A stretch of 63,572 nt of DNA, counting the filler, from Platydemus manokwari (Eukaryota): NCBI GenBank assembly GCA_037951405.1. It is 5 parts of 5 records of this genome, joined end to end, with 100 filler letters (N's around TTAATTAATTAA, not from the genome) between each part and the next. Parts side by side here need not be neighbours in the genome. Positions count along the whole stretch, not along the records: positions 34,348 to 54,357 come from JBBMOY011655847.1; 4 more parts are not named here. The stretch is one strand, 5' to 3'. How positions within the stretch are numbered: the first letter of the stretch is position 1; each line of letters opens with the position of its first letter. The position numbers and the translations under genes are program-made. The notes below the pieces were generated by a model. That model was not told the DNA's origin. It searched no databases and was given only the letters and a program-made list of their open reading frames with translations. Shown here one piece after another: positions 34,348 to 50,991 of the stretch.

Positions 34348-36245
34348 TTCGGTCACTCCATTGAGTCTTCGATAATCCACACACATCCGGATCGATCCGT
34401 CCTTTTTTCCTACGATGACCAGTGATGAATTCTAAGCACTCTTGCATTGTCTTTTTACTCCTATTTCGATCAGGTTTTTCATCATGTCTTCAATTTTTGC
34501 TTCTAAGTGCATGGCTACAACCTGGGATTCTGCGAAATAGGATTTCCGGTAATTATAATATCGTGAACAAATAAGGTGGTTCTGCCTAGAGCTAATTTCG
34601 AAGCCATGAATATATTTCCGTATTCTTCGATCAGTGTTCCAATTCTTCCCGTGTTCCCAGTTTTTATCGTTTAGATTGCGTGTTTCGATCTTTCCTCGTC
34701 TGTATATTTGTCTTTAAATTGTGATGAATCGATTGTGACTATCTCTTTCAGCTGAATCCCGAATGCATTCATCGTGTCAACACCTCCAATTAAATCGGGA
34801 CAAATTCCTTTGCTATCACAACCCTAATTTTTCTTTTCTTTCCTTTCCACTCGGCAATGACATCTGAATAACCCAGAGGGCGTTCGGCACCCGTTGAAAA
34901 CATTCCACTAAGCGTAATCAAACTATCCTGCAATTTTTGGCTTCCCACCTTCTTCCAATAGTTCTCGGTCATCGCTGTGATAGATGTTCCCGAATCCCAA
35001 TACATTTCGACTTCAGCTCCGTTGATCAACACTTTACTCCATACCCTAGCATCGTCCTTCTTAAACATCTCTTCACGTCTGGTTCCACTTCGAATTTTCT
35101 TGTTATCTATTGATTCAACCCCATCGACGAAATGCAGCGACGGAGTTGTTGTCTATTTTTTGATCTTCTATCTCCTGCATTACTGGGTTTTCAATTGGCT
35201 CAAATTGCTCCTTGATTTCGTCTTGAATACATAAAATTCTACCTTCTACTCTATATCAAGTACCTCGTATTAGATGACATGATCTGAAATGATAGTCTTT
35301 TTGTTCGCATATTAAACATTTGTGTCTTAAGGGGCACTGGCTTCTGTAGTGTCAGCTTTCTCCACAGCAGACGCAATTGTCTCCACGCAATCATTCTCCT
35401 TTTGGATCTGGTATGCATCGACACTTATTGTAAAGTTTCTTGGCCATGTATTTCATCGAATACACTGTCTCTCTCTACCTGAAGCAAACTTCTGCTCTAA
35501 AGCTATTGGCTCGGGGTTCCGTGTTCTGATAGCATGATGTGGCTTATAATTACTAGACTAGTTGCCTTCCTTTTTGTACTGGTTATTCCACAGGTTGCTA
35601 TATCCAGTTTTTAGCTCTTGAACATAGCTGTCTCTACGAATTGTATTGACTGCTTGAGAATCTCGCTGTACCCTTTGTTCTCGATTCTCGAACATCTTTG
35701 CAGCACTTCTAACTTCTATGATAGACATGTCTGGTATCAGGGCAAGAGCGTCTTTTAATCCATTCGATCCTGTTCTCTTGCTGATAATATCTTTCACTAT
35801 GGAATCTTGATTCAATCCGAAATTCATCACAGCCTCGACCAATCTGTGAACTCTTATCTCGAAGGTGGCAAACCGTTCTCTCTCAGATTGTTGAACACTT
35901 GCAAGTTCGAAAATCATATCCATTATCAATTTTTTGATTGTAAATGTATCTTCAAACCACGATTTAGCTGATTCTTCTGTGGTATTTTCCGATTTATATT
36001 TTTTCTAAAAAATGCCTGCTTCGTCCGTAAGTAGTAAGTCGAATGCGCTAATCAGGCTGAGATTATTAATTAATAACCATTACTCGGTATTTTGCATGCA
36101 CTTTGCGGCCTCGTTTGAATTCCTGACATCGAATTTTCGTATATTGAAATTGAGCGCTTCTTGAGCTTGTTTCGGCAACCTCTCTGATAACTGTTTCCTC
36201 TGCTGGTTCCTTGTTATTGCGTTGATTTGTATGGAGTGGTCACCA
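34348..36245 (-). mobile_element. Decayed Ty3/Gypsy LTR retrotransposon (gag, protease, start of RT), cut by the gap
   Basis: PBS-like TGGTGACC at 36245. Gag fragment at 35558-35929. Two CCHC knuckles, 'CVCCGES*HYRSQCP' and 'CLICEQKDYHFRSC' (35275-35375). Protease 'MYWDSGTSIT' (~35000). RT motif 'NSSLVIVGKKDGSIRMCVDYRRLN' (34350-34435). Confidence 0.92.
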
Positions 36246-38010: not shown

Positions 38011-38712
38011 ATGAAATTAATCAGTGACGAGATGAAAGATGAATTATTTGTTCGATTTTTATCGGATGTGACACTTTATAATACTAGCATGTCGAAATGC
38101 TTTGGGAAATTGGAGAGAATGTACTGGTACCATATTGATTTAAATAATATAGATGAAAAACCATCAAAAATTGGAATGAGAAAATTTGTCAAACAAATTA
38201 AAGATTATTTGTTTCATATTTTGCCAGAAGGATTGGATGTCATCGAAGAATATGATAAATGGATTAAAAATCGTTCTAAAGTTCCACGATGTAAAGTCAT
38301 ATTATTAGATTCGAATCTAGAAAATGTAATTCTGACAAAGAATCAATTTTCTGAATTTCTATTGTTTCCTGGTGGGAAAGTAGATGATAGCGATAGAGAT
38401 TTGGTCGATACAGCTATTAGAGAAACATTTGAAGAAATTGGTATTGATATCTCAGATAAAATTAAACCAGATCAATATTTTGATCTTCATCAATATGGTA
38501 TGAAAAATCGTTATTACATAATAGGGAATATTGACATGAGTACTGAATTGAAACCGTTAGTTTCCAATGAAATCGAATATATCAAGTGGTTCCCTCTTAG
38601 AGACTTACCAAATAATGTGGAAAAGTACAACTTAACAGCTCACAATACGAAACTTATCAGATTATCTATTCCTGAATTGAAAAAATATCTATCTAGCATG
38701 TTAGATAACTAA
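38011..38712 (+). CDS. Dcp2-like mRNA-decapping Nudix hydrolase, intronless, 233 aa
   Basis: Box A-like 'DELFVRFL..CFGKLERMYWYHIDL', 'SKVPRCKVILLD', Nudix box 'FPGGKVDDSDRDLVDTAIRETFEEIG', and 'EIEYIKWFPLRDLP'. Confidence 0.88.
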   Translation: MKLISDEMKDELFVRFLSDVTLYNTSMSKCFGKLERMYWYHIDLNNIDEKPSKIGMRKFVKQIKDYLFHILPEGLDVIEEYDKWIKNRSKVPRCKVILLDSNLENVILTKNQFSEFLLFPGGKVDDSDRDLVDTAIRETFEEIGIDISDKIKPDQYFDLHQYGMKNRYYIIGNIDMSTELKPLVSNEIEYIKWFPLRDLPNNVEKYNLTAHNTKLIRLSIPELKKYLSSMLDN

Positions 38713-39699: not shown

Positions 39700-42600
39700 T
39701 TGCCAGTATATATTTTAATGACGCTTGAATGTCTCGATTATTTTCCGTGGATAAGTTTCACAAGAAATGCCTTCTAGACGGATTCCAAATTGTTTGATGT
39801 CTTAAAATATTTGTACTGTTGGAGTTATTATTTTTCTACGATTATATTAACAATATTTGTTTGCTTGAATCCATGTGAATTATTTTACTTTTATTTATTG
39901 AATATAACATTATTTCTTTATATCAAGTTTATTTATCCATTTTCTTGTCTTGATTTCTAATATTATTTTATCTCCAAATTTAAGTCCGAGTTATTTAACA
40001 TTTTAATCTTAAAATTCTTCATTTATTTTTGAGCAAAATTTATCTTTAACTTAGCTCTTTGTCATTGTTCTTTGAATTTTTCGTTCATTATATCCATAGT
40101 ATTATTTATTCATATTATTTTTGAATTATTTCTAAGACATTCTGTATATTACTATGTTTGAGATACATTAGATAAAACGATGAATATCCTGTACTGGATT
40201 GGATTTAATGACATTTCTATAAATATATAAGAATGATAATCATTTTGAGCTGAGTTCTTAAATTATATGTTTCACGAATAAATCCCACAAACACTTTATA
40301 TTGCCAGTGGTTAGCTTTGTTATTTAGAATTCTTTGTTGTTGGCTTCTTTCATTTGAAAAGTTCAGTATCTGTGTGTCGATAAACTTTGTAGTGCTCTAT
40401 ATCGACATACTATTGCCTAGATAAACAGTTTGCCTATTATGCTTGCCTTTTGTCAGCAATTACTTATGCTTCAGGCCATCTTGTTAAATGGTCAATAAAT
40501 GCGACTGTATTTCTTGCTAATTTTAGTCAGAAAAAGTATTCCAACTGTGTCTATTGCCATCCTTTCCGTAGGTGCACTTGGTGCAAATATTGGTTAAATT
40601 TATTTTTAAATTTATGTTTTTAAATTTATTTCATGTTTTGTCGAGTCTGACACACTTTTCACGTGATATACTATTGTTTTAAGTCTTTCCCAGTAATATA
40701 TTTGATAAATTCGATATCTCGTTTTCCTGGAAGATTGAGATCCTCATAATGTTCCATGGTGATATTGCAATAAAATTGTTTCTTGCAACTACTCTAGCAC
40801 TATTATCAAATTGTTATGATCCGTTAAGACATGCATCTGGTGTGCATAGATGAAATCTCCAAACTTTTCTGCTGTATAAAATACTACTTCTAGTTAGAAT
40901 ACTACTTAGATTTTCTCATGACTTTTACGTGTTCTCTATGTAGCACATTTGATGCCATGGTCATCTGTGTGTCCCCATGCTTCACTTACATCGTTTATGA
41001 TGATGAATTGTTTAGTCATATTGGGATGTCTGATTATATATTTTCTGAAATTAGTATCGCTTTGAGCTTGATAAATATTTGTTCTTCTGTCACATTGTAA
41101 AGAGATATTTTAATGTAGTAATTGAATTAATGGTGTAGATATTGTTGCACAATAATATCGTAAAACTGATGTCGCTATTCAGCATTCCCGATCTTTGTAC
41201 TGTTAAAATCTAGCTCATTAAGGTTTCTTTTGTGCTTTTGGTGATAATATTTAAAAGCTTGGTTACTTATTTCATTATGTTAACTGCGAAATACGTGATG
41301 AAATTAATAGATTAATGGGTTATTTTGTCTACTACCCCGAGATGAGTAAAGATTCGATCAGGGTATGTAAGGTGCTTCCTTCTATTCTTACTCTTTTTGT
41401 AATGAATCTTTAATTGAGTCGAAAAACTTTTAGTTTTTTATATAAGCTTCCAATGTTTGATTTGCAATTCCAGAAAGTTCATCGACAGTCTCATTGAACT
41501 GTATTTGGGTTGTTTATGGATCGTTAGTACTTTTCTTACGAAACAAATTATTCTAACACTTTATCGACTATCTGTATTTAATTCTAAAATCATTTGCTTC
41601 GGATATTAAAACCCTTGTCTATTAATTATCTCCTGTAATTTAGGTATACATTCCTCTGTTTCGATATCCATGTGTTGATAATAATGAGATTCCAGATAAT
41701 TCAGCAATCTTTCTAGACACTTTCTTGATTTCGGGGTTAGCCGAAGTCTCTATTAGATCATTGATATGCTTGTGATATTGCTTATATAGTTTGCGTGAAT
41801 TGGTTGAATGGCTTCTGCGGGCCTTCTTCGAGAACAGACGCGTGTTGCGGATGTTAATGTTTTGGTTGGGTTTAATTTTTGGTCTGGGTTATTAATTCTC
41901 TTAAACGGTCAGCGCATGTGCTCAGCTGTTGCAATCATGCTAGCTCATTATTTTCGGTGATTAGCGGAATAACCACTGGTGTTTTTTCTTCTACTACTTT
42001 GATAAGAAATTGCATTTTCGTGGCATAACCGAAATTTCCTGCTCGTATGTCACCTAGGTTAATTGTTACTATTGGTTTGTGATTACTTGTATACGTATTA
42101 AATATTCTTCATCATTCACGTGATTCGTCCATACTGTGAGCACTAAAGATACATTTATTTATATATTTCTTTATTATTTTTTATTTTGGACGTCTTTCTC
42201 TAGAATGTGAGAAGTTATAAAATGTGACCGAGGTAGAGGTAAATGCACTTCGATGCGGTATGTGGCAATTTCTACCAGTTATGTGACTAGGAATGGGATC
42301 ATGTCTTTGAGCTGATCCACTGATATGCTTATGTATATTTGTTCACTAAATAGGCTTTTTACCTCTTCATCGCTTATGGATGATTTAAGTATATTGGGTT
42401 AGAGCCCTTTTAATAAATCTGTTCATTTTCTTATGTCTACTTGAGTTAGTGTATTACCCCAATTTATTGCTAGCAAAACCTATTTGTCTTCGCTTCCAAT
42501 AATGATCTGGTCTTGTTCTTGTCTGAGTTACTTGATTCCATCTTCTTCAACCGAATTTCCTTTTGATGCATGGTAATTAATTTCCTATTTTTCATTGATA

Positions 42601-43400
42601 ATTCGTTTTGTGCCTGCGCGTTTTTCTGCATTTTTTTTTCTTCTTTAATTACACGCGCAGTCTTTTTTACCTGATAGTGATGTTTGCAATTACTGGCGAT
42701 AACCTTGTTTGATTGAATTGTTCGGTTGCCTCTGAGCACAGTATGAATTCTTTTTCATACTTTGTTTGAGCTTGTACATGTTTTGAGGTGTATAACCAAT
42801 AAATGCATAGAAAATTTATTCATGTTGTCTTTTTCGTATGTTCTTCCCTAAGGCCTATTTCAATCATCTTTCAGGCAGTTTGCTATAGTTCTGATGCATC
42901 TTCTTTGTTGAATCATGTATTTTCTCCTTTCTTATTATTTCAAGTTAGATCCTGCATTATTTTCGTTGTTTATTTGGAGTATAATTGCTCTCCTTTCTCG
43001 AAAAGATCTGCACTTCTGCTACTGTCTGGAGTACCTTTTTTCCCATATTCTACATAGAGGCTTCGATAATAATATGTTTATTTTGAACTTCAGTACATAA
43101 ATTGATCTAGATTTTTTTCTTTAAAATTGAACATCATTTTCCCAAATACAGATTTTCTTGAAGGAGGGTGATTTTTCAGCTTTTTTATTCCAAAATTTGG
43201 ATTTTTGTCATGTAATTCATGCATTTTAATTCTCCTGTCTAAGTTTCGGTGTGTATCCCCTTGTACATGTGTTTCATGTTAAAAACGGATGTTTATTGTA
43301 AGTTTCCTCCTTTTTGTGCTTTTAGCATTATGCAGAGTTCTTTTATGTTCTTAACTTACTAAATCTAATGCGCTTTTATTTGTTATTGGTTCAAGTTTTA
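39700..43400 (-). mobile_element. Old, heavily decayed Ty3/Gypsy element (integrase recognisable)
   Basis: Minus-strand integrase motifs 'LQYHH..RIYQIYYW' (40690-40770), 'APSAPTERMAIDTVG' (~40540-40585) and 'AFIDHLTRWPEA' (~40468-40503). Upstream broken coding-like sequence is presumed gag/pol; boundaries approximate. Confidence 0.7.
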
Positions 43401-45499: not shown

Positions 45500-46888
45500 T
45501 TATTTTCCAATCTGACTTCGTAACATATGCATGTTTTTTTCTAATCGCCGTAGTCGGCTTTGATCGGCTCGCATGTGAAATTTGAGCGATCTAATTTCAG
45601 AACGCAATGACTGAAGAGATTGCCTTAAAGATTTATTTTTATTCCTGGCGGTATGCTTATCTTTCGGTTTGGCATCTGTAGTCGGTGTTTTGGTGAGTTG
45701 ATCATTGTCAGCCTGGGTATTAGGTTGATAATTCATTTGTACAGTGTGTAGAACTGGTGGATTCTGTGGAGTGGCCGTTGGTACGGAAATCCAGTTATAG
45801 AGTGCCAAATTAGGAATAGGTTGGTTGGTATCCGTGGAAACCGGAGAAGTAGTTATGGGTGTAGTTTCTGTGCTGCCATTTGTTCGACCATTGGCTATAT
45901 GAGACATGGTATGACAATTTGAACTTATGGCTACAGATTCCTCGAAAGTTTGTTTACCGAATATTGGAGACTGACTAACGGTAACTCTACCAATATCATT
46001 ATTGACAGAACTATTTCCTATCGCCGGCTTGATATTGTTAAGAGATTGCGGTTTTGGAGTCAACGGGAAAGGTTCGATTTTTACTTTTTGCTTTGTTATT
46101 GGTTTTTTATAGCTCGAGTTATCTTTACGCATGTAATCAGCACGCACAGCTCTCTCAGCTGCTTCAATGTGTTTTCGTACATAATCTTCGGTACTGAGCT
46201 TGGGTTTAGATTGACAAATAGAACTGCTAACGGAAGTTGGAGAAGTGGTGATAACCCTTGATTGGGTAATTACCGGTGATGGCATTTGGGCCATCTGAGT
46301 GATACAAGGTTGTGGCATTTGAGTGAGATTAATTGGGATAACGTGATTGCAGTTTGGTGGTACAGTTATGCAGTTTAAATTAGGAACTTCAGTAGACTGC
46401 CGCGACACCATTAATTGCTGGGTTGCAAGCAAGCTTAATAGATCAATGCCACTGGGCCGTTTTGCCACATCATGTAAAGTTGTATTAACCACATTCAATC
46501 CGTTTAAACCTAAATTGGCGACAGCTAAAGATTTAGACAAAGTCAATAATAAGTTCGAGTCAAGATGAGCTGGAATGTTAATGACTGGAGATGTGGTTGT
46601 TACAATTGGGTTGGATGTTTGAACGGTGCTTGTGGGATTTGGATTCGCTTGTGAGAATTGTGCTGGAGGTGAAATGCATTCCATTTTAACACTGGACGGT
46701 TTTTCCGATCTCTGTTCACGAAATTTCACCATAAGCGCCAGCTCCTCTTCCGTGAAATCATCTTCTTGCGGGAGAACAGGAGGGATCTCCATTGAATTGA
46801 TACTTCGATTACTGCGTTTGTCGTTTTCGATTGAGACCGTTTCCGAATCCAACTGACAACGTTTAGAATGAATTTCATCTTCTGACTC
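45500..46888 (-). CDS. Terminal exon, 462 aa: S/T/P/Q-rich low-complexity region ending in a heptad coiled coil
   Basis: The listed ORF starts at TTG, not ATG. It is preceded by in-frame phase-0 acceptors (ctacAG at 46890-46889) just after an in-frame TAG. Ends [42 protein letters not shown]. Confidence 0.85.
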   Translation of the reverse strand, partial: ESEDEIHSKRCQLDSETVSIENDKRSNRSINSMEIPPVLPQEDDFTEEELALMVKFREQRSEKPSSVKMECISPPAQFSQANPNPTSTVQTSNPIVTTTSPVINIPAHLDSNLLLTLSKSLAVANLGLNGLNVVNTTLHDVAKRPSGIDLLSLLATQQLMVSRQSTEVPNLNCITVPPNCNHVIPINLTQMPQPCITQMAQMPSPVITQSRVITTSPTSVSSSICQSKPKLSTEDYVRKHIEAAERAVRADYMRKDNSSYKKPITKQKVKIEPFPLTPKPQSLNNIKPAIGNSSVNNDIGRVTVSQSPIFGKQTFEESVAISSNCHTMSHIANGRTNGSTETTPITTSPVSTDTNQPIPNLALYNWISVPTATPQNPPVLHTVQMNYQPNTQADNDQLTKTPTTDAKPKDKHTARNKNKSLRQSLQSLRSEIRSLKFHMRADQSRLRRLEKNMHMLRSQIGK

Positions 46889-49800
46889 CTGTAGAATATT
46901 CTAGTGGTACAACATGATAACTTTATATCATTTGTGAATGTATCTGACAGTGACAACTAATAATAGAAGCATTTTTTAGACGAAAGAGAAACAAATATCG
47001 AGAAAAATTGGTTTCTAATATCTATGTGTGATAATGAAAGTAAATTTTTGGTAATAGTTTCAAAAAATTTATTAATAATTTTCAATAAAAGTGGGATTAA
47101 AATCACTAATTGAAACTAAAAATCAATACTGAAACCAGTATTGAATTCATTAGTGATTAAAATCGATTTGGAAGTCTGTAATTGCTACCACAATAGCAAA
47201 GAAATCGATAATGAAAATCAATAATTGTAGTAATTCTGAACTCAATAACTGACATCGACCATACACACCGTTTTTTTTTCAATCAGAAGAGTAGAAAAAA
47301 ATATTTAAATCAATATTTGATATGATTCAAAAATCAATACTGCAACACAATAGAATACAAAAGATTAAAACAAATTTAATCGATATATACATTCATAGTT
47401 AATACAAATATTAAATCTATAATTCGAACAAAAATTAAAATCAATATCAACATTCTTAGGTGCGCAACTCCTAAATGAAAGGAAAAATTCAAAGAATTCT
47501 TCAGAAAAAAATTTAATTCAAAATTGTATTAATCAATAAATCGATGTACTTTTCAACGACGAAAAATACCATATGGAAAAATCAAAAAATGCTTCTATTA
47601 CTCTACTTATTAAATTTGTAAGTAGACAAATTTCATTTATTATTTTATTGAAAATTACGATTACGTTTTCATTATTTTGTAACTATTTTTAAACATCAAA
47701 CTATTTTATGAGAATTGGATTTCTAATGTACAAAACTGATAATACTAACATTACTGGACACGTCTTCATACATTTCGTTGGGTTTCATTGAGCTTTTCTT
47801 TCTTTTCCTGTTCACGTCTCTCGGAGAATTTTCCGACAAAACCGATAGCGATTCACTGGTATGAGAAGAGGCATAAATTCTGTAACGAGCAAATTAATTA
47901 ATAACATTTTCATAACGCCATTTTTCTTGCAACTCACTTCGTATCATCTCTGTTGTTATGTTGGGTGTGCTCTTCATTGTTATAGCACATGCGACATCGA
48001 CAAAGACTCGAACAGAACACCTTGTTCTACACCGTATGACAATTGGATTAAAAGACAAATGAAAATTCAAAATCCAACCTCAAAGCATTCGCAATAATTT
48101 TTCAAACAAGACGACTTCAAGCAATTGCAGCCTTTACTGTGCTTCTTGCCGACATCTTTGTTTTCTGAAGATATGAACAATTGGGTTTATGTATTTATTT
48201 CTATCAAATTGTTATGTGAAATGTACGAATTATTGACAGGCCAGAAACCAGTGTCAAAAATTTTGAAATGCATAAATCAATAAATGTTTTGATCAAATAA
48301 TCAATAATCAATGGTGATTATTTCACCTCTACAGTTGATCAATAACAGATTGATATTATAAATCAATATTAGAATGGCGAATTAATGAAATAATAATCAA
48401 CATTAGATTGACTAAACAAGAAATAAAGAAAATCAATACAAATAATTTTCTCATTCATTTTTGTACGGCTATGAAGAGAATGTGAAAATCAATATGGCAA
48501 TTTCTTAACAGCATTTCAAGCTTAATCTCATATTTAACAAATAAATATTCACGTTGACCCCGATCAGAAAAAAATGTGATGATGATGATGTCATCATAAT
48601 GATTGCATGATTGGGTGCGGCTCGTAACACAAGATTTATCTTCACACTATTCAAACAAGATCGATGACAGCCATCATTGATGACGTCATTGTGATTATAA
48701 AAATTATAACCTATTTTAGAATTGAAGACCCATGGATCTCGTTCCAAATACGAACTGACGATTTTCGCTCGTTCTTCTTTGTGATTTTCATTGTTTCGAC
48801 AATTGATACACGTGCAACCCGAACAGCACAGATTGCCATTAGCAAAACATTCACAATACAATTTCAAACAACTCGATTTGGTGCAAGTGCAACTGCGTGA
48901 CGATGTCTCTTCGCTAGGTGTTGTCGTACGATCTGGGGTTTGGGAAATGTTGAATGAATTTTTCCGTTGCATGAAATTGGCACCACTTTCGACATTTGGG
49001 TCGGGCTGATTGACGAATTCCTTTTTAACTGGATCTTTTTTATTGATTTCTACAAATATATCCAATCGATATCAGTTATTATTATCATTATTATTATCGA
49101 TCAATATTTCTCAACAGCTACTGTCATTATAAATATAATTATTGCCATTATTTTTTGCTTGTTTTGTTGCGGATGTCTGCAATTGTGTTAATTAAAAGTA
49201 ACCATAGATCAACTACAACCATACCAGATAAATCAAATTTCTATATTATCTAACATTCATACTGTGTCAGTTTAATTGATTGATGATTTATCACTCCTTC
49301 ACGATGCAATAAGAAACCAGGCGTGATTTCATATTGACCATTGAGTTTTGTTTTTAAAAAACAAATCTTATCTCACACACATTTGAAAAATGAACAGTTT
49401 TTGACACATTAAATTAATATCGATAATCAATACAAATATTCCAATTTTTTTGCAGATGTGTTGATATTGTAAATTGTGATTGATAAAATTAATATTGAAT
49501 TATCAGATGTTCTGCGAGAAAATGAAATATCAACAATTGTAAATATTGATTGATAATAGAAATTGATCGATTAGAAAATTGATTATGAAATATTTCAATG
49601 AAAATTAACAAAATAATATTGATTAATAAAATTCAATAATACCTATTTCGTTGACTTTTTCTTTTTTCAATGTCTGATCGTCGAGCTTGTTATAACTTTG
49701 TGACAGATTTAGTGGACCGGTCGGCATGGAAACGTTCACTGATAATGATTTGGCTAAATCTGAATTATTATTGGCCATATTTACACGTGATATCGAACTG

Positions 49801-50991
49801 AGTAAGTAATTCAGAAGATTGCTTTTGATAGAGACTGTATTGTCAGGAACTAATTGGATTGTCGACTGAGTATTGAGATTTGTTTGAATGTTATGCTGAT
49901 TTGTGTGGGCTTGTACGAATGATTCTTTGAAAATCGGCACTTTGGCCGACACGACAGGGTTAAATTTTTCCAATGAATTCGACATCATTGCCGGTTTTTG
50001 ATCGACTGGATTTAATTCTGATGTCGTATTTGGAGTTTTCGATGGAGTTTTTTGTGAACGATGCTTACTAAGATCGGTTTGCAAATCGGTATCGATAATC
50101 AATTTTGAGCAGATATCATTTTCCGGTAATTCAAATTTCACAGTGGACGATTCTGTGAATGGGGAAGGAGAATAAATATTCATGCGATTTAAATGATCAC
50201 ATAAGTTAGGATATAAAAATATCAATTCAATCGTTAACTTATTGTTGTGCGTTTGATGTAGCTGTGTGTAAAATCAATATAAGCGATACGATAAAGAGAA
50301 TCAATAATTTAATTCAAAACTAGGCTGGCTGCGATGATACATATGTATAGGCAAATCACATCTCTGTGCATTCAAACTACGATTGTTTGTGTGCTTCATT
50401 CAATTTTCGAAGGCGTGTGTCTCACTGAGATGTGTGCATAGTTTAAGTAACTATTGATTTTGTATGATGTTAATAATATCTGAATTAACCTGTCCAATCA
50501 GAATGAAGTATTCTTAATCAATAATTGGTTTCTTTGTGTCTCATTGACAACCAAATAATTAATTAAAAAAATTAATTTAATAATTAATAAATATAAAAAA
50601 TAATTATTGATTTACCTTGAGATAACTTCGATCCACTTGAAGCATTCAGGAAAGCTTTCGCAAGTATCTTCTGTTCGAGTTCTTTGATTTTAGATTCATA
50701 CTCTTCAACGGATTTAAAACTCTTCATTTTTTCTTCTTTCGTTGACCAAGGAAAAATTGTGGGCATGTAATCGATATGGCCAGAATCAAGATTCGGTTTG
50801 CCAGTAGCAAAATGCGAATTACAAATGCGAGAATTCGACGAAACTGTCCCGTACTTAATTCGATCGCCAATTTGATTAAGCCAGAGTTGTTTGCGATCAC
50901 TGTTTTGTGGTAAACGATAAAATATTTTCCGTTTCTTGGAATTGACGGATTCGGATTCACAATTGAGAATGCAACAAAACAAAGTTGGCAT
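45500..50991 (-). CDS. THAP zinc finger + CRC (tesmin/LIN-54-like) DNA-binding protein with C-terminal coiled coil; 7 exons, 972 aa
   Basis: Exons 50991-50616, 50152-49643, 49049-48711, 48164-48079, 48026-47938, 47879-47750, 46888-45500 (2919 nt). All GT-AG, intron phases 1,1,1,0,2,0, no internal stop. Unifies ORF-track entries 50584-51078, 49623-50225, 48505-49065 and 45500-46852. Confidence 0.72.
47938..49049 (-). other. lin-54-like: CRC domain (two CXC repeats, tesmin/TSO1/LIN-54 family) spread over three exons
   Basis: [33 protein letters not shown], linker [11 protein letters not shown], then [22 protein letters not shown]|[16 protein letters not shown]. Confidence 0.95.
50616..50991 (-). 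other. THAP (C2CH) zinc-finger exon followed by a short coiled coil
   Basis: [34 protein letters not shown] has the invariant C, C, P, W, C, H, F, P and an AVPTIF-like box. It is followed by [20 protein letters not shown] and the donor CAAG|gtaaat. Confidence 0.93.

What the first reader, a model, noticed from the sequence alone, without database searches (positions are those of the whole stretch)
45500..50991. Hidden THAP + CRC (LIN-54/tesmin-like) fusion: two sequence-specific zinc DNA-binding modules in one 972-aa protein
Seen: four ORFs listed separately splice in frame through six canonical introns. THAP exon CAAG|gt (50616) joins the pyrimidine-rich acceptor ttctccttccccattcacAG (exon start 50152), then CXC1, CXC2, RKRKKS and the 462-aa terminal exon with a coiled coil. 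Established: LIN-54 is the CHR-binding subunit of DREAM/MuvB, and the LIN-54/tesmin proteins I know carry no THAP domain. THAP domains are shared with P-element transposases and recur in the Rb/E2F pathway (C. elegans LIN-36 and LIN-15B, fish THAP-E2F6, human THAP1). Inference: a lineage-specific DREAM-type regulator whose targeting is rewired by an added, possibly transposon-derived, domain. That would matter for stem-cell or germline cycle control if the host is a planarian. I cannot confirm novelty without a search.
Basis: partly seen in the sequence, partly recalled or inferred. Interest (0 to 1): 0.85.

Follow-up and report, generated by a model that had tools for sequence, protein, structure and literature searches.

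The report
THAP plus CRC zinc-finger fusion gene
The sequence encodes a 972-residue protein that joins a THAP zinc finger to a tesmin/LIN-54-type CRC DNA-binding domain; the pairing is rare, and because the protein lacks the LIN-54 tail that recruits DREAM partners it is more likely a divergent stand-alone transcription factor than the DREAM subunit itself.

Summary
Seven minus-strand exons (50991 to 45500), joined through six GT..AG introns, give an uninterrupted 972-aa frame. Pfam finds THAP in exon 1 and TCR/CXC in exon 3 and in exons 4+5. A database protein (P0001, 499 aa, 76% identical over residues 1-440) carries the same THAP-to-exon 2-to-CXC1-to-CXC2 joins. It is the only one of the 120 listed CRC relatives with both domains.

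- The gene lacks the C-terminal helix-coil-helix (HCH) domain of LIN-54/tesmin. The literature describes that domain as necessary and sufficient for pulling down B-MYB and p130.
- 102 of the 119 nearest relatives have HCH. Neither the model nor any frame of the 20-kb piece does.
- The CRC is an outlier: about 53% identity to all relatives and a tree end branch of 2.34 against a median of 0.061. Both minor-groove tyrosines and all 18 cysteines are kept.

It is best read as a divergent, lineage-restricted CRC paralogue carrying a THAP head, a long disordered tail and a terminal leucine-heptad helix.

No RNA evidence could be obtained. An in-frame ATG 30 nt upstream of exon 2 leaves a CRC-only product possible. 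No transposon features were found.

The parts
50616..50991 (-). Exon 1. Start ATG at 50991, THAP C2CH zinc finger (residues 6-80), then a short heptad helix (about residues 85-114). Ends at the donor CAAG|GTAAAT.
   Evidence: Pfam PF05485, 1.2e-11, full profile. PDB THAP11 2lau 3.4e-4. 94% identical to P0001 residues 1-125.
50153..50615 (-). Intron 1 (463 nt, 28% GC), with a C/T-rich acceptor tract. It contains an in-frame ATG at 50183 that could start a CRC-only protein if the intron were not spliced.
49643..50152 (-). Exon 2 (phase 1). Linker of unknown function. Some blocks are conserved with P0001, for example residues 126-148 and about 235-285.
   Evidence: Alignment A3, 64% identity with long invariant blocks. 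No Pfam family above cut-off.
48711..49049 (-). Exon 3. First CXC repeat (9 Cys, KLY motif with the minor-groove Tyr) and the inter-repeat spacer, which reads [10 protein letters not shown].
   Evidence: Pfam PF03638 9e-11. Human LIN54 5fd3 3.6e-24, aligned to the exon end.
48079..48164 (-). Exon 4. First half of the second CXC repeat (CNC...KNY...CEC). It ends at an intron position that other LIN-54 genes appear to share.
   Evidence: Pfam PF03638 4.8e-7, profile positions 2-20. 97% identical to P0001. The tails of P0151, P0202 and P0249 turn non-homologous at this same point, which looks like intron read-through.
47938..48026 (-). Exon 5. Second half of the second CXC repeat, following a 52-nt intron.
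   Evidence: Pfam PF03638 profile positions 22-38, E 0.018. All nine Cys and the C-x6-C spacing match the family consensus.
47750..47879 (-). Exon 6. Ser-rich linker with the basic cluster RKRKK (residues 491-495), a likely nuclear localisation signal.
   Evidence: That it acts as a localisation signal is inferred.
45500..46888 (-). Exon 7. 462-codon terminal exon, mostly disordered and rich in S/T/P/N. A helix lies at residues 743-764 and a 50-residue C-terminal helix with leucine heptads at about residues 922-971. Stop codon at 45500-45502.
   Evidence: AF2 single-sequence model: 364 of 462 residues below pLDDT 50, helix 412-461 above 90. Heptad registers LLLDLL and LIMLMI. No homologue among candidates of 254-808 aa. 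No HCH.

Best explanation
This is a single seven-exon gene for a 972-aa nuclear transcription factor with two different sequence-specific zinc DNA-binding modules.

Domain layout:
- An N-terminal THAP C2CH finger followed by a short helix.
- A complete tesmin/TSO1-type CRC made of two CXC repeats.
- A basic cluster, a roughly 430-residue disordered tail, and a C-terminal leucine-heptad helix that probably mediates self-association.

How it probably works. The CRC keeps the two tyrosines and the K(L/N)Y motifs with which human LIN54 reads TTYRAA (CHR) through the minor groove. It is therefore expected to bind CHR-like A/T-rich hexamers. The THAP finger would add a second recognition site, so the protein would select composite sites.

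Relation to LIN-54. It is not the canonical LIN-54 subunit. It lacks the HCH domain through which LIN54 associates with B-MYB and p130, and its CRC is a strongly diverged but now constrained branch. It is therefore most likely a lineage-restricted paralogue that acts at CHR-type elements independently of MuvB, or in competition with it.

Shown here: the frame, the domains, the residue conservation, the absence of HCH, the rarity of the architecture, and a homologue with the same joins. Inferred: use of the joins in RNA, DNA specificity, dimerisation, and independence from MuvB.
For: - Gene model and splice signals.
- THAP and TCR above Pfam cut-offs.
- LIN54 structure match with Tyr536, Tyr610, K534/L535, N609, R574 and all 18 Cys conserved.
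- P0001 has the same exon 1-2-3-4 joins, and both Pfam domains are precomputed for it.
- Identity to P0001 differs by region: THAP 94%, CRC about 98%, linker 60%. This is the pattern expected from purifying selection on both modules in one protein.
- Exon 2 is conserved as protein from its first codon, and no methionine is conserved before those blocks. Translation must therefore enter from upstream.
- The HCH profile hits 102 of 119 relatives, including flatworm LIN-54s, at 1e-12 to 1e-28. It scores 0 on the model, and nothing above E of about 5 is found in six frames of the piece. hhalign gives a probability of 0.04%.
- HCH function is described in PMC5550918.
- The CRC is an outlier in the tree and by identity.
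- The tail is disordered with a confident terminal helix, and the heptads are present.
Against: - There is no transcript evidence for any junction. No RNA run holds this sequence.
- P0001 is known only as a UniParc/MetaClust entry. It may itself be a computational gene model, and its exon 5 is read in the wrong frame.
- An in-frame ATG at 50183 would allow a CRC-only protein, and the THAP frame stops 10 codons past the donor, so a 135-aa THAP-only product is conceivable.
- Joins 5-6 and 6-7 rest on frame continuity alone.
- Absence of HCH does not prove absence from MuvB, since other contacts are possible.
- The dimerisation test gave no verdict.
- Whether the genome holds a separate canonical lin-54 could not be checked. 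P0153 is only a candidate.
Confidence: 0.6

Rival explanations
1. There are two transcription units, or alternative promoters. One is a small THAP-only protein that ends in intron 1. The other is a separate CRC protein of about 857 aa that starts at the in-frame ATG at 50183. On this reading the fusion exists only on paper, or only as a minor isoform.
For: The ATG at 50183 is in frame with exon 2, and the THAP frame stops 10 codons after the donor. Many stand-alone THAP proteins of 120-200 aa exist. No RNA evidence is available.
Against: - The 10 codons after that ATG form the C/T-rich tract of a strong 3' splice site.
- Donor and acceptor are in matching phase.
- P0001 joins the two parts at the same residue.
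- Only 463 nt would have to hold a terminator and a promoter.
Confidence: 0.2
2. It is the lineage's canonical LIN-54 orthologue. It gained a THAP domain, lost a recognisable HCH, and still serves as the DNA-binding subunit of MuvB/DREAM.
For: The CRC is the LIN-54 type, with both tyrosines. THAP proteins cooperate with DREAM in C. elegans. No other lin-54 could be examined in this genome.
Against: - HCH is absent while it is retained in the other flatworm LIN-54s and tesmins tested.
- CRC identity is about 53% against about 70% between flatworm and vertebrate LIN-54.
- The spacer RNPxAFxPKI is changed at three positions that are 96-99% conserved.
- P0153 is a canonical, HCH-bearing LIN-54 with a similarly AT-biased composition and a nearby UniParc number to P0001. 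This hints that a separate orthologue exists in such genomes.
Confidence: 0.12
3. It is a decaying duplicate or an exonised fragment with no function.
For: Long tree branch. No homologue for the tail. The only relative has a disrupted second CXC in its database sequence.
Against: - The 972-codon frame is intact, with chance probability of about 1e-35.
- All zinc ligands and DNA-contact residues are kept.
- THAP and CRC are 94-98% identical to P0001 while the linkers have drifted to 60%.
Confidence: 0.04

Closest known systems
LIN-54 / Mip120 / LIN54 (DNA-binding subunit of MuvB/DREAM; structure 5FD3)
   Same: Tandem CXC repeats with 9 Cys each. The KLY and KNY motifs with the two minor-groove tyrosines are present, and the Arg of the spacer helix is kept. 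An intron falls at the same point in the second CXC.
   Different: It has no HCH domain, and the N-terminal THAP domain is absent from every other listed relative. CRC identity is only about 53%. The spacer motif is altered. The tail after the CRC is about 500 residues, against about 130 in canonical LIN-54, and it ends in a leucine-heptad helix.
Tesmin (MTL5/TESMIN) and plant TSO1/CPP CRC proteins
   Same: CRC DNA-binding core. As in vertebrates, a paralogue may exist beside LIN-54.
   Different: Vertebrate tesmins tested here keep the HCH (P0158 2.7e-24, P0205 7.5e-18). They form their own clade, to which this protein does not belong, and none has THAP.
THAP-domain regulators of the Rb/E2F/DREAM pathway (C. 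elegans LIN-36 and LIN-15B; human THAP1 and THAP11)
   Same: N-terminal C2CH THAP finger followed by a helical segment. There is a documented functional link to DREAM targets (PMC8552245).
   Different: Those proteins work with DREAM in trans and have no CRC. Here the THAP finger and a CHR-type reader are on one chain. No HCF-1 binding motif ([DE]HxY) is present.
P0001 (UniParc UPI00060B99E2, 499 aa, unnamed)
   Same: THAP, then linker, CXC1 and the first half of CXC2, with identical join positions. 76% identity over residues 1-440. Pfam lists both PF05485 and PF03638.
   Different: The database sequence reads exon 5 in another frame and stops at residue 499, so it lacks an intact second CXC and the long tail. 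Its organism is not given. It could be an orthologue in a related species or a paralogue.

Membership tests
THAP domain (PF05485) | Pfam score above the gathering cut-off over the whole profile | tested here: met
   45.6 bits against 23.9, profile positions 1-87 of 87.
THAP domain (PF05485) | C2CH zinc signature (C-x2-4-C-x35-53-C-x2-H), the conserved Pro, Trp and Phe, and a C-terminal AVPTIF-like box at the protein's N-terminus | tested here: met
   C7/C11, C57 and H60, P28, W37, F61 and the box YMPTIF at residues 75-80, starting at residue 2. The signature itself is from established knowledge.
CRC / tesmin-TSO1 CXC (PF03638) | Two CXC repeats, each with nine Cys | tested here: met
   Pfam hits in exon 3 and in exons 4+5. 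All 18 Cys align with the family consensus, with one extra residue in the first repeat.
CRC / tesmin-TSO1 CXC (PF03638) | Conserved inter-repeat spacer RNPxAFxPKI | tested here: inconclusive
   It reads [14 protein letters not shown] and I are kept. N to D, A to V and P to S fall at positions that are 96-99% conserved.
LIN-54 (MuvB/DREAM subunit) | DNA-reading residues Tyr536 and Tyr610 within K(L/N)Y motifs | tested here: met
   KLY and KNY are both present.
LIN-54 (MuvB/DREAM subunit) | C-terminal helix-coil-helix (HCH) domain, necessary and sufficient for B-MYB and p130 pull-down | tested here: not met
   The HCH HMM scores 0.0 on the model, and nothing is found in six frames of 34348-54357. 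hhalign probability is 0.04%. 102 of 119 relatives have the domain. Its function is described in PMC5550918.
LIN-54 (MuvB/DREAM subunit) | CRC groups with LIN-54 orthologues in a tree | tested here: inconclusive
   End branch 2.34 against a median of 0.061. No starred clade holds it, and its weak neighbours are long branches.
LIN-54 (MuvB/DREAM subunit) | Physical association with LIN9, LIN37, LIN52 and RBBP4 | not testable with these tools
   Needs co-immunoprecipitation or mass spectrometry.
P-element-type THAP transposase (THAP9-like) | Transposase catalytic domain and terminal inverted repeats | tested here: not met
   No transposase family in any exon. Only short AT-rich chance repeats lie around the exon.

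The most novel reading that the evidence does not exclude
A natural 'Rosetta-stone' fusion. In this lineage a THAP finger and a CHR-reading CRC have been joined on one chain and freed from the MuvB-docking HCH domain. The result would be a dimeric factor that occupies composite THAP-site/CHR promoter elements and antagonises or replaces DREAM at a subset of cell-cycle or germline genes. If so, the THAP-DREAM cooperation seen in trans in C. elegans would be an ancient, direct, DNA-level partnership.
Probability: 0.2. Interest if true: 0.75.

Novelty: new variant of a known kind. Interest (0 to 1): 0.5.

Why it matters
THAP proteins (LIN-36, LIN-15B, THAP1, THAP11) are repeatedly linked to Rb/E2F/DREAM targets, but how they meet DREAM at promoters is unclear. 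A protein that carries a THAP finger and a CHR-type CRC on one chain argues that the two readers can act on neighbouring DNA sites. It also offers a simple way to define such composite sites.

Its lack of the HCH domain makes it a natural separation-of-function variant of LIN-54: DNA reading without MuvB docking. That could show what CRC binding alone does at CHR promoters.

The claim is modest. Domain shuffling among transcription factors is common, the gene seems confined to one narrow lineage, and it has not been shown to be expressed.

Tried and rejected
- **RNA support.** Two searches for sequencing runs, one with the whole gene and one with exon 1 alone, found only X1. Laying X1 showed one 8437-nt genomic contig across the gene, unspliced. 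The two 'joints' are 22-24-nt AT-rich chance matches. The junctions therefore remain unverified.
- **Terminal exon.** The homologue search found nothing among proteins of 254-808 aa. The Atlas searches with the terminal exon and with P0001 gave no usable hit.
- **Origin of P0001.** No contig encoding P0001 is on record. Its cluster has one member, from MetaClust/UniParc, so neither its organism nor its origin (cDNA or prediction) could be settled.
- **Metagenome scans.** Two scans, with THAP patterns and with exon 2 patterns, found no relative.
- **Full-length query.** The spliced 972-aa protein has no reference, so it was never sent as one query. Domains were searched apart. As a result, relatives longer than 873 aa were outside the length window. 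The exhaustive THAP search has no such limit, and among its best 150 only P0001 has a CXC motif.
- **Self-association of the C-terminal helix.** Complex prediction with two copies of 63 residues gave no verdict, score 0.06. This is evidence neither for nor against.
- **bZIP reading of the C-terminus.** Rejected; there is no Pfam hit.
- **HCF-1 binding motif and LxCxE.** Absent.
- **Transposon origin of the THAP exon.** No support.
- **Identifying the host through the neighbouring Nudix gene.** Failed. All close homologues are unnamed.
- **Literature.** No paper links THAP with CRC/tesmin, or LIN-54/tesmin with planarians.


Full report
**Observation**

The minus strand between 50991 and 45500 holds seven coding segments. 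Their boundaries all carry GT..AG, and their phases match, so the joined CDS is 2919 nt and encodes 972 aa plus a stop.

Exons are 37-42% GC and introns 24-31%. Introns 4 and 5 are only 52 and 58 nt. On this strand the chance of a stop is 0.080 per codon, so open frames of 462 and 972 codons have probabilities near 2e-17 and 1e-35.

Pfam places a full-length THAP domain at residues 6-80 of exon 1 (1.2e-11). It places one TCR/CXC repeat in exon 3 (9e-11) and the two halves of a second repeat in exons 4 and 5, at profile positions 2-20 and 22-38. The second repeat therefore exists only after splicing, which supports that join independently.

Exon 3 aligns to the crystallised DNA-binding domain of human LIN54 (5fd3, 3.6e-24), right up to the last residue of the exon.

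**Are the joins real?**

No RNA evidence could be had. Searches with the whole gene and with exon 1 alone returned one holder, X1. Laid on the gene, X1 is a single unspliced genomic contig, probably the DNA source of the assembly.

The best independent support comes from an exhaustive THAP search of 1.84 billion representatives. The top hit, P0001 (499 aa, UniParc UPI00060B99E2), is 94% identical over exon 1. It continues through exon 2, CXC1 and the first half of CXC2 with the same join positions, and is 76% identical over residues 1-440.

Identity to P0001 varies along the protein: THAP 94%, CRC about 98%, linker 60%. That is the pattern expected when both domains of one protein are under purifying selection.

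P0001 reads exon 5 in a shifted frame and stops at residue 499, although its exon 6 equivalent is back in frame. It therefore looks like an imperfect gene model from a draft genome, not proof of a transcript. Its organism and encoding contig are not on record.

Exon 2 is conserved as protein from its very first codon, and the two sequences share no methionine ahead of those blocks. Translation must therefore enter exon 2 from upstream. A transcript trans-spliced or initiated at the acceptor is excluded by this.

Two possibilities remain: the THAP exon, or an in-frame ATG at 50183, which is 30 nt upstream of the acceptor. The ten codons after that ATG are the polypyrimidine tract itself. I put the fusion transcript at about 0.8. 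Joins 5-6 and 6-7 rest on frame continuity and composition only.

**What kind of CRC protein is it?**

A search with P0001 found 354 CRC relatives of 274-873 aa. Among the 120 listed, which include many flatworm, vertebrate, tunicate, mollusc and arthropod LIN-54 and tesmin proteins, only P0001 carries PF05485 together with PF03638. Among the 150 best THAP relatives, only P0001 has a CXC motif.

I built a profile of the region that follows the CRC in fourteen LIN-54 proteins. [quoted passage not shown] According to PMC5550918, citing Schmit et al. 2009, that domain is necessary and sufficient for pull-down of B-MYB and p130.

- The profile hits the flatworm LIN-54s, the vertebrate tesmins and the unnamed P0152, P0153 and P0154 at 1e-12 to 1e-28, but scores 0.0 on this model.
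- It finds 102 of the 119 relatives. Most of the rest are truncated or non-animal.
- It finds nothing in any frame of the 20-kb piece.
- A profile-profile comparison with the terminal exon gives a probability of 0.04%.

The CRC itself is an outlier.

- Median identity to all relatives is 53%, with a maximum of 60%. A flatworm LIN-54 and a shark LIN54 share 70-73%.
- In a maximum-likelihood tree its end branch is 2.34 changes per column against a median of 0.061, and no supported clade holds it.
- The near-invariant spacer RNPxAFxPKI reads [10 protein letters not shown].

The functional core is nevertheless intact. All 18 cysteines are kept, as are both K(L/N)Y motifs with the tyrosines equivalent to Tyr536 and Tyr610, which read TTYRAA through the minor groove, and the equivalents of S530, K534, L535, R574, N600, S604 and N609. 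The changes N526T, K602L and R603K fall mostly at positions that contact DNA through the backbone.

Because the CRC is about 98% identical to P0001, the long branch reflects an old divergence followed by constraint, not ongoing decay.

**The rest of the protein**

- Residues 85-114 after the THAP domain show a weak heptad pattern.
- RKRKK at residues 491-495 is a likely nuclear localisation signal.
- The 462-residue terminal exon has no homologue in the searches that could be run. A single-sequence AlphaFold model leaves 364 residues below pLDDT 50.
- That model gives a helix at exon residues 233-254 and a 50-residue C-terminal helix above pLDDT 90. The a/d positions of the terminal helix are Leu, Ile or Met.
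- A two-copy complex prediction of that helix gave no verdict.
- There is no transposase domain and no terminal repeat around the THAP exon.

**Interpretation**

The functional label needs changing. A defining LIN-54 feature, the HCH domain, was tested and not met, so the protein should not be filed as a LIN-54 or DREAM subunit.

It most likely works like a LIN-54 at the DNA level, reading CHR-type sites through its tyrosines. It would have an added THAP site reader and a terminal coiled coil, but it would act outside MuvB, as an independent factor or as a competitor at CHR promoters.

P0153 is a canonical, HCH-bearing LIN-54, 70% identical to neodermatan LIN-54s. Its composition is as AT-biased as that of P0001, and its UniParc number is close to P0001's. 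This hints, without proving it, that genomes of this kind also keep an ordinary lin-54.

The documented cooperation of the THAP proteins LIN-36 and LIN-15B with DREAM (PMC8552245) makes a cis fusion of THAP and a CHR reader biologically suggestive.

**Host**

The host could not be identified. The AT-rich sequence, the short introns, the LTR retroelement remnants and the weak affinity to flatworm CRCs are compatible with a flatworm. No named close relative was found.

**Novelty and limits**

No paper in the library links THAP with CRC/tesmin, or describes LIN-54/tesmin in planarians. One database protein already shows the architecture but is unnamed. I rate this a new variant of a known kind.

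The limits are:
- There is no expression evidence.
- Only one homologue is known, and its origin is unknown.
- The spliced full-length protein could not be sent as one query, so relatives longer than 873 aa could only have been caught by the THAP search.
- The rest of the genome was not available to look for a canonical lin-54.

Noticed in passing
window 38011-38712 (+): An intronless 233-aa ORF with a NUDIX domain (3.8e-13) and a weak Dcp2 box A match, so it resembles a short Dcp2-like decapping enzyme. It has 11 unnamed homologues of about 231-276 aa (49-67% identity), most on short contigs from ENA, Logan and JGI. This suggests an expanded or mobile family.
   Followed up: partly
window 34790-35929 (-): ORF fragments with weak retroviral-type aspartyl protease matches (gag-asp_proteas 6.2e-5) in a block of about 40% GC at the edge of the piece. 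They are probably remnants of an LTR retroelement.
   Followed up: partly
window 48079/48026 (exon 4/5 boundary); P0151, P0202, P0249: The intron that splits the second CXC just after CECF/YE seems to sit at the same place in other LIN-54 genes. Three database proteins turn into non-homologous tails at exactly this point, which looks like intron read-through in their models.
   Followed up: no
P0001 residues 441-499: The only close relative reads the exon 5 equivalent in a shifted frame and returns to the right frame in the exon 6 equivalent. This is probably a one-base error in a draft assembly or a compensating mis-splice in a gene model, so its database sequence understates the protein.
   Followed up: partly
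window 48020-48026: The exon 5 acceptor is a tandem TAG|AACAAG| arrangement. Using the second AG, 6 nt downstream, would stay in frame and delete two residues (NK), shortening the C-x6-C spacing of the second CXC. It is a possible minor isoform.
   Followed up: no
window 40300-43400: A stretch of about 3 kb with raised GC (32-34%) and strong AT skew (-0.20 to -0.34) but no ORF over 90 aa on either strand. It may be a UTR, a non-coding transcript or a decayed repeat.
   Followed up: no
hits (e.g. P0167, P0168, P0172): Many fish tesmin-like CRC proteins are named 'spexin prohormone 2' in NCBI and UniRef. This appears to be a propagated annotation from read-through or neighbouring-gene models.
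   Followed up: no
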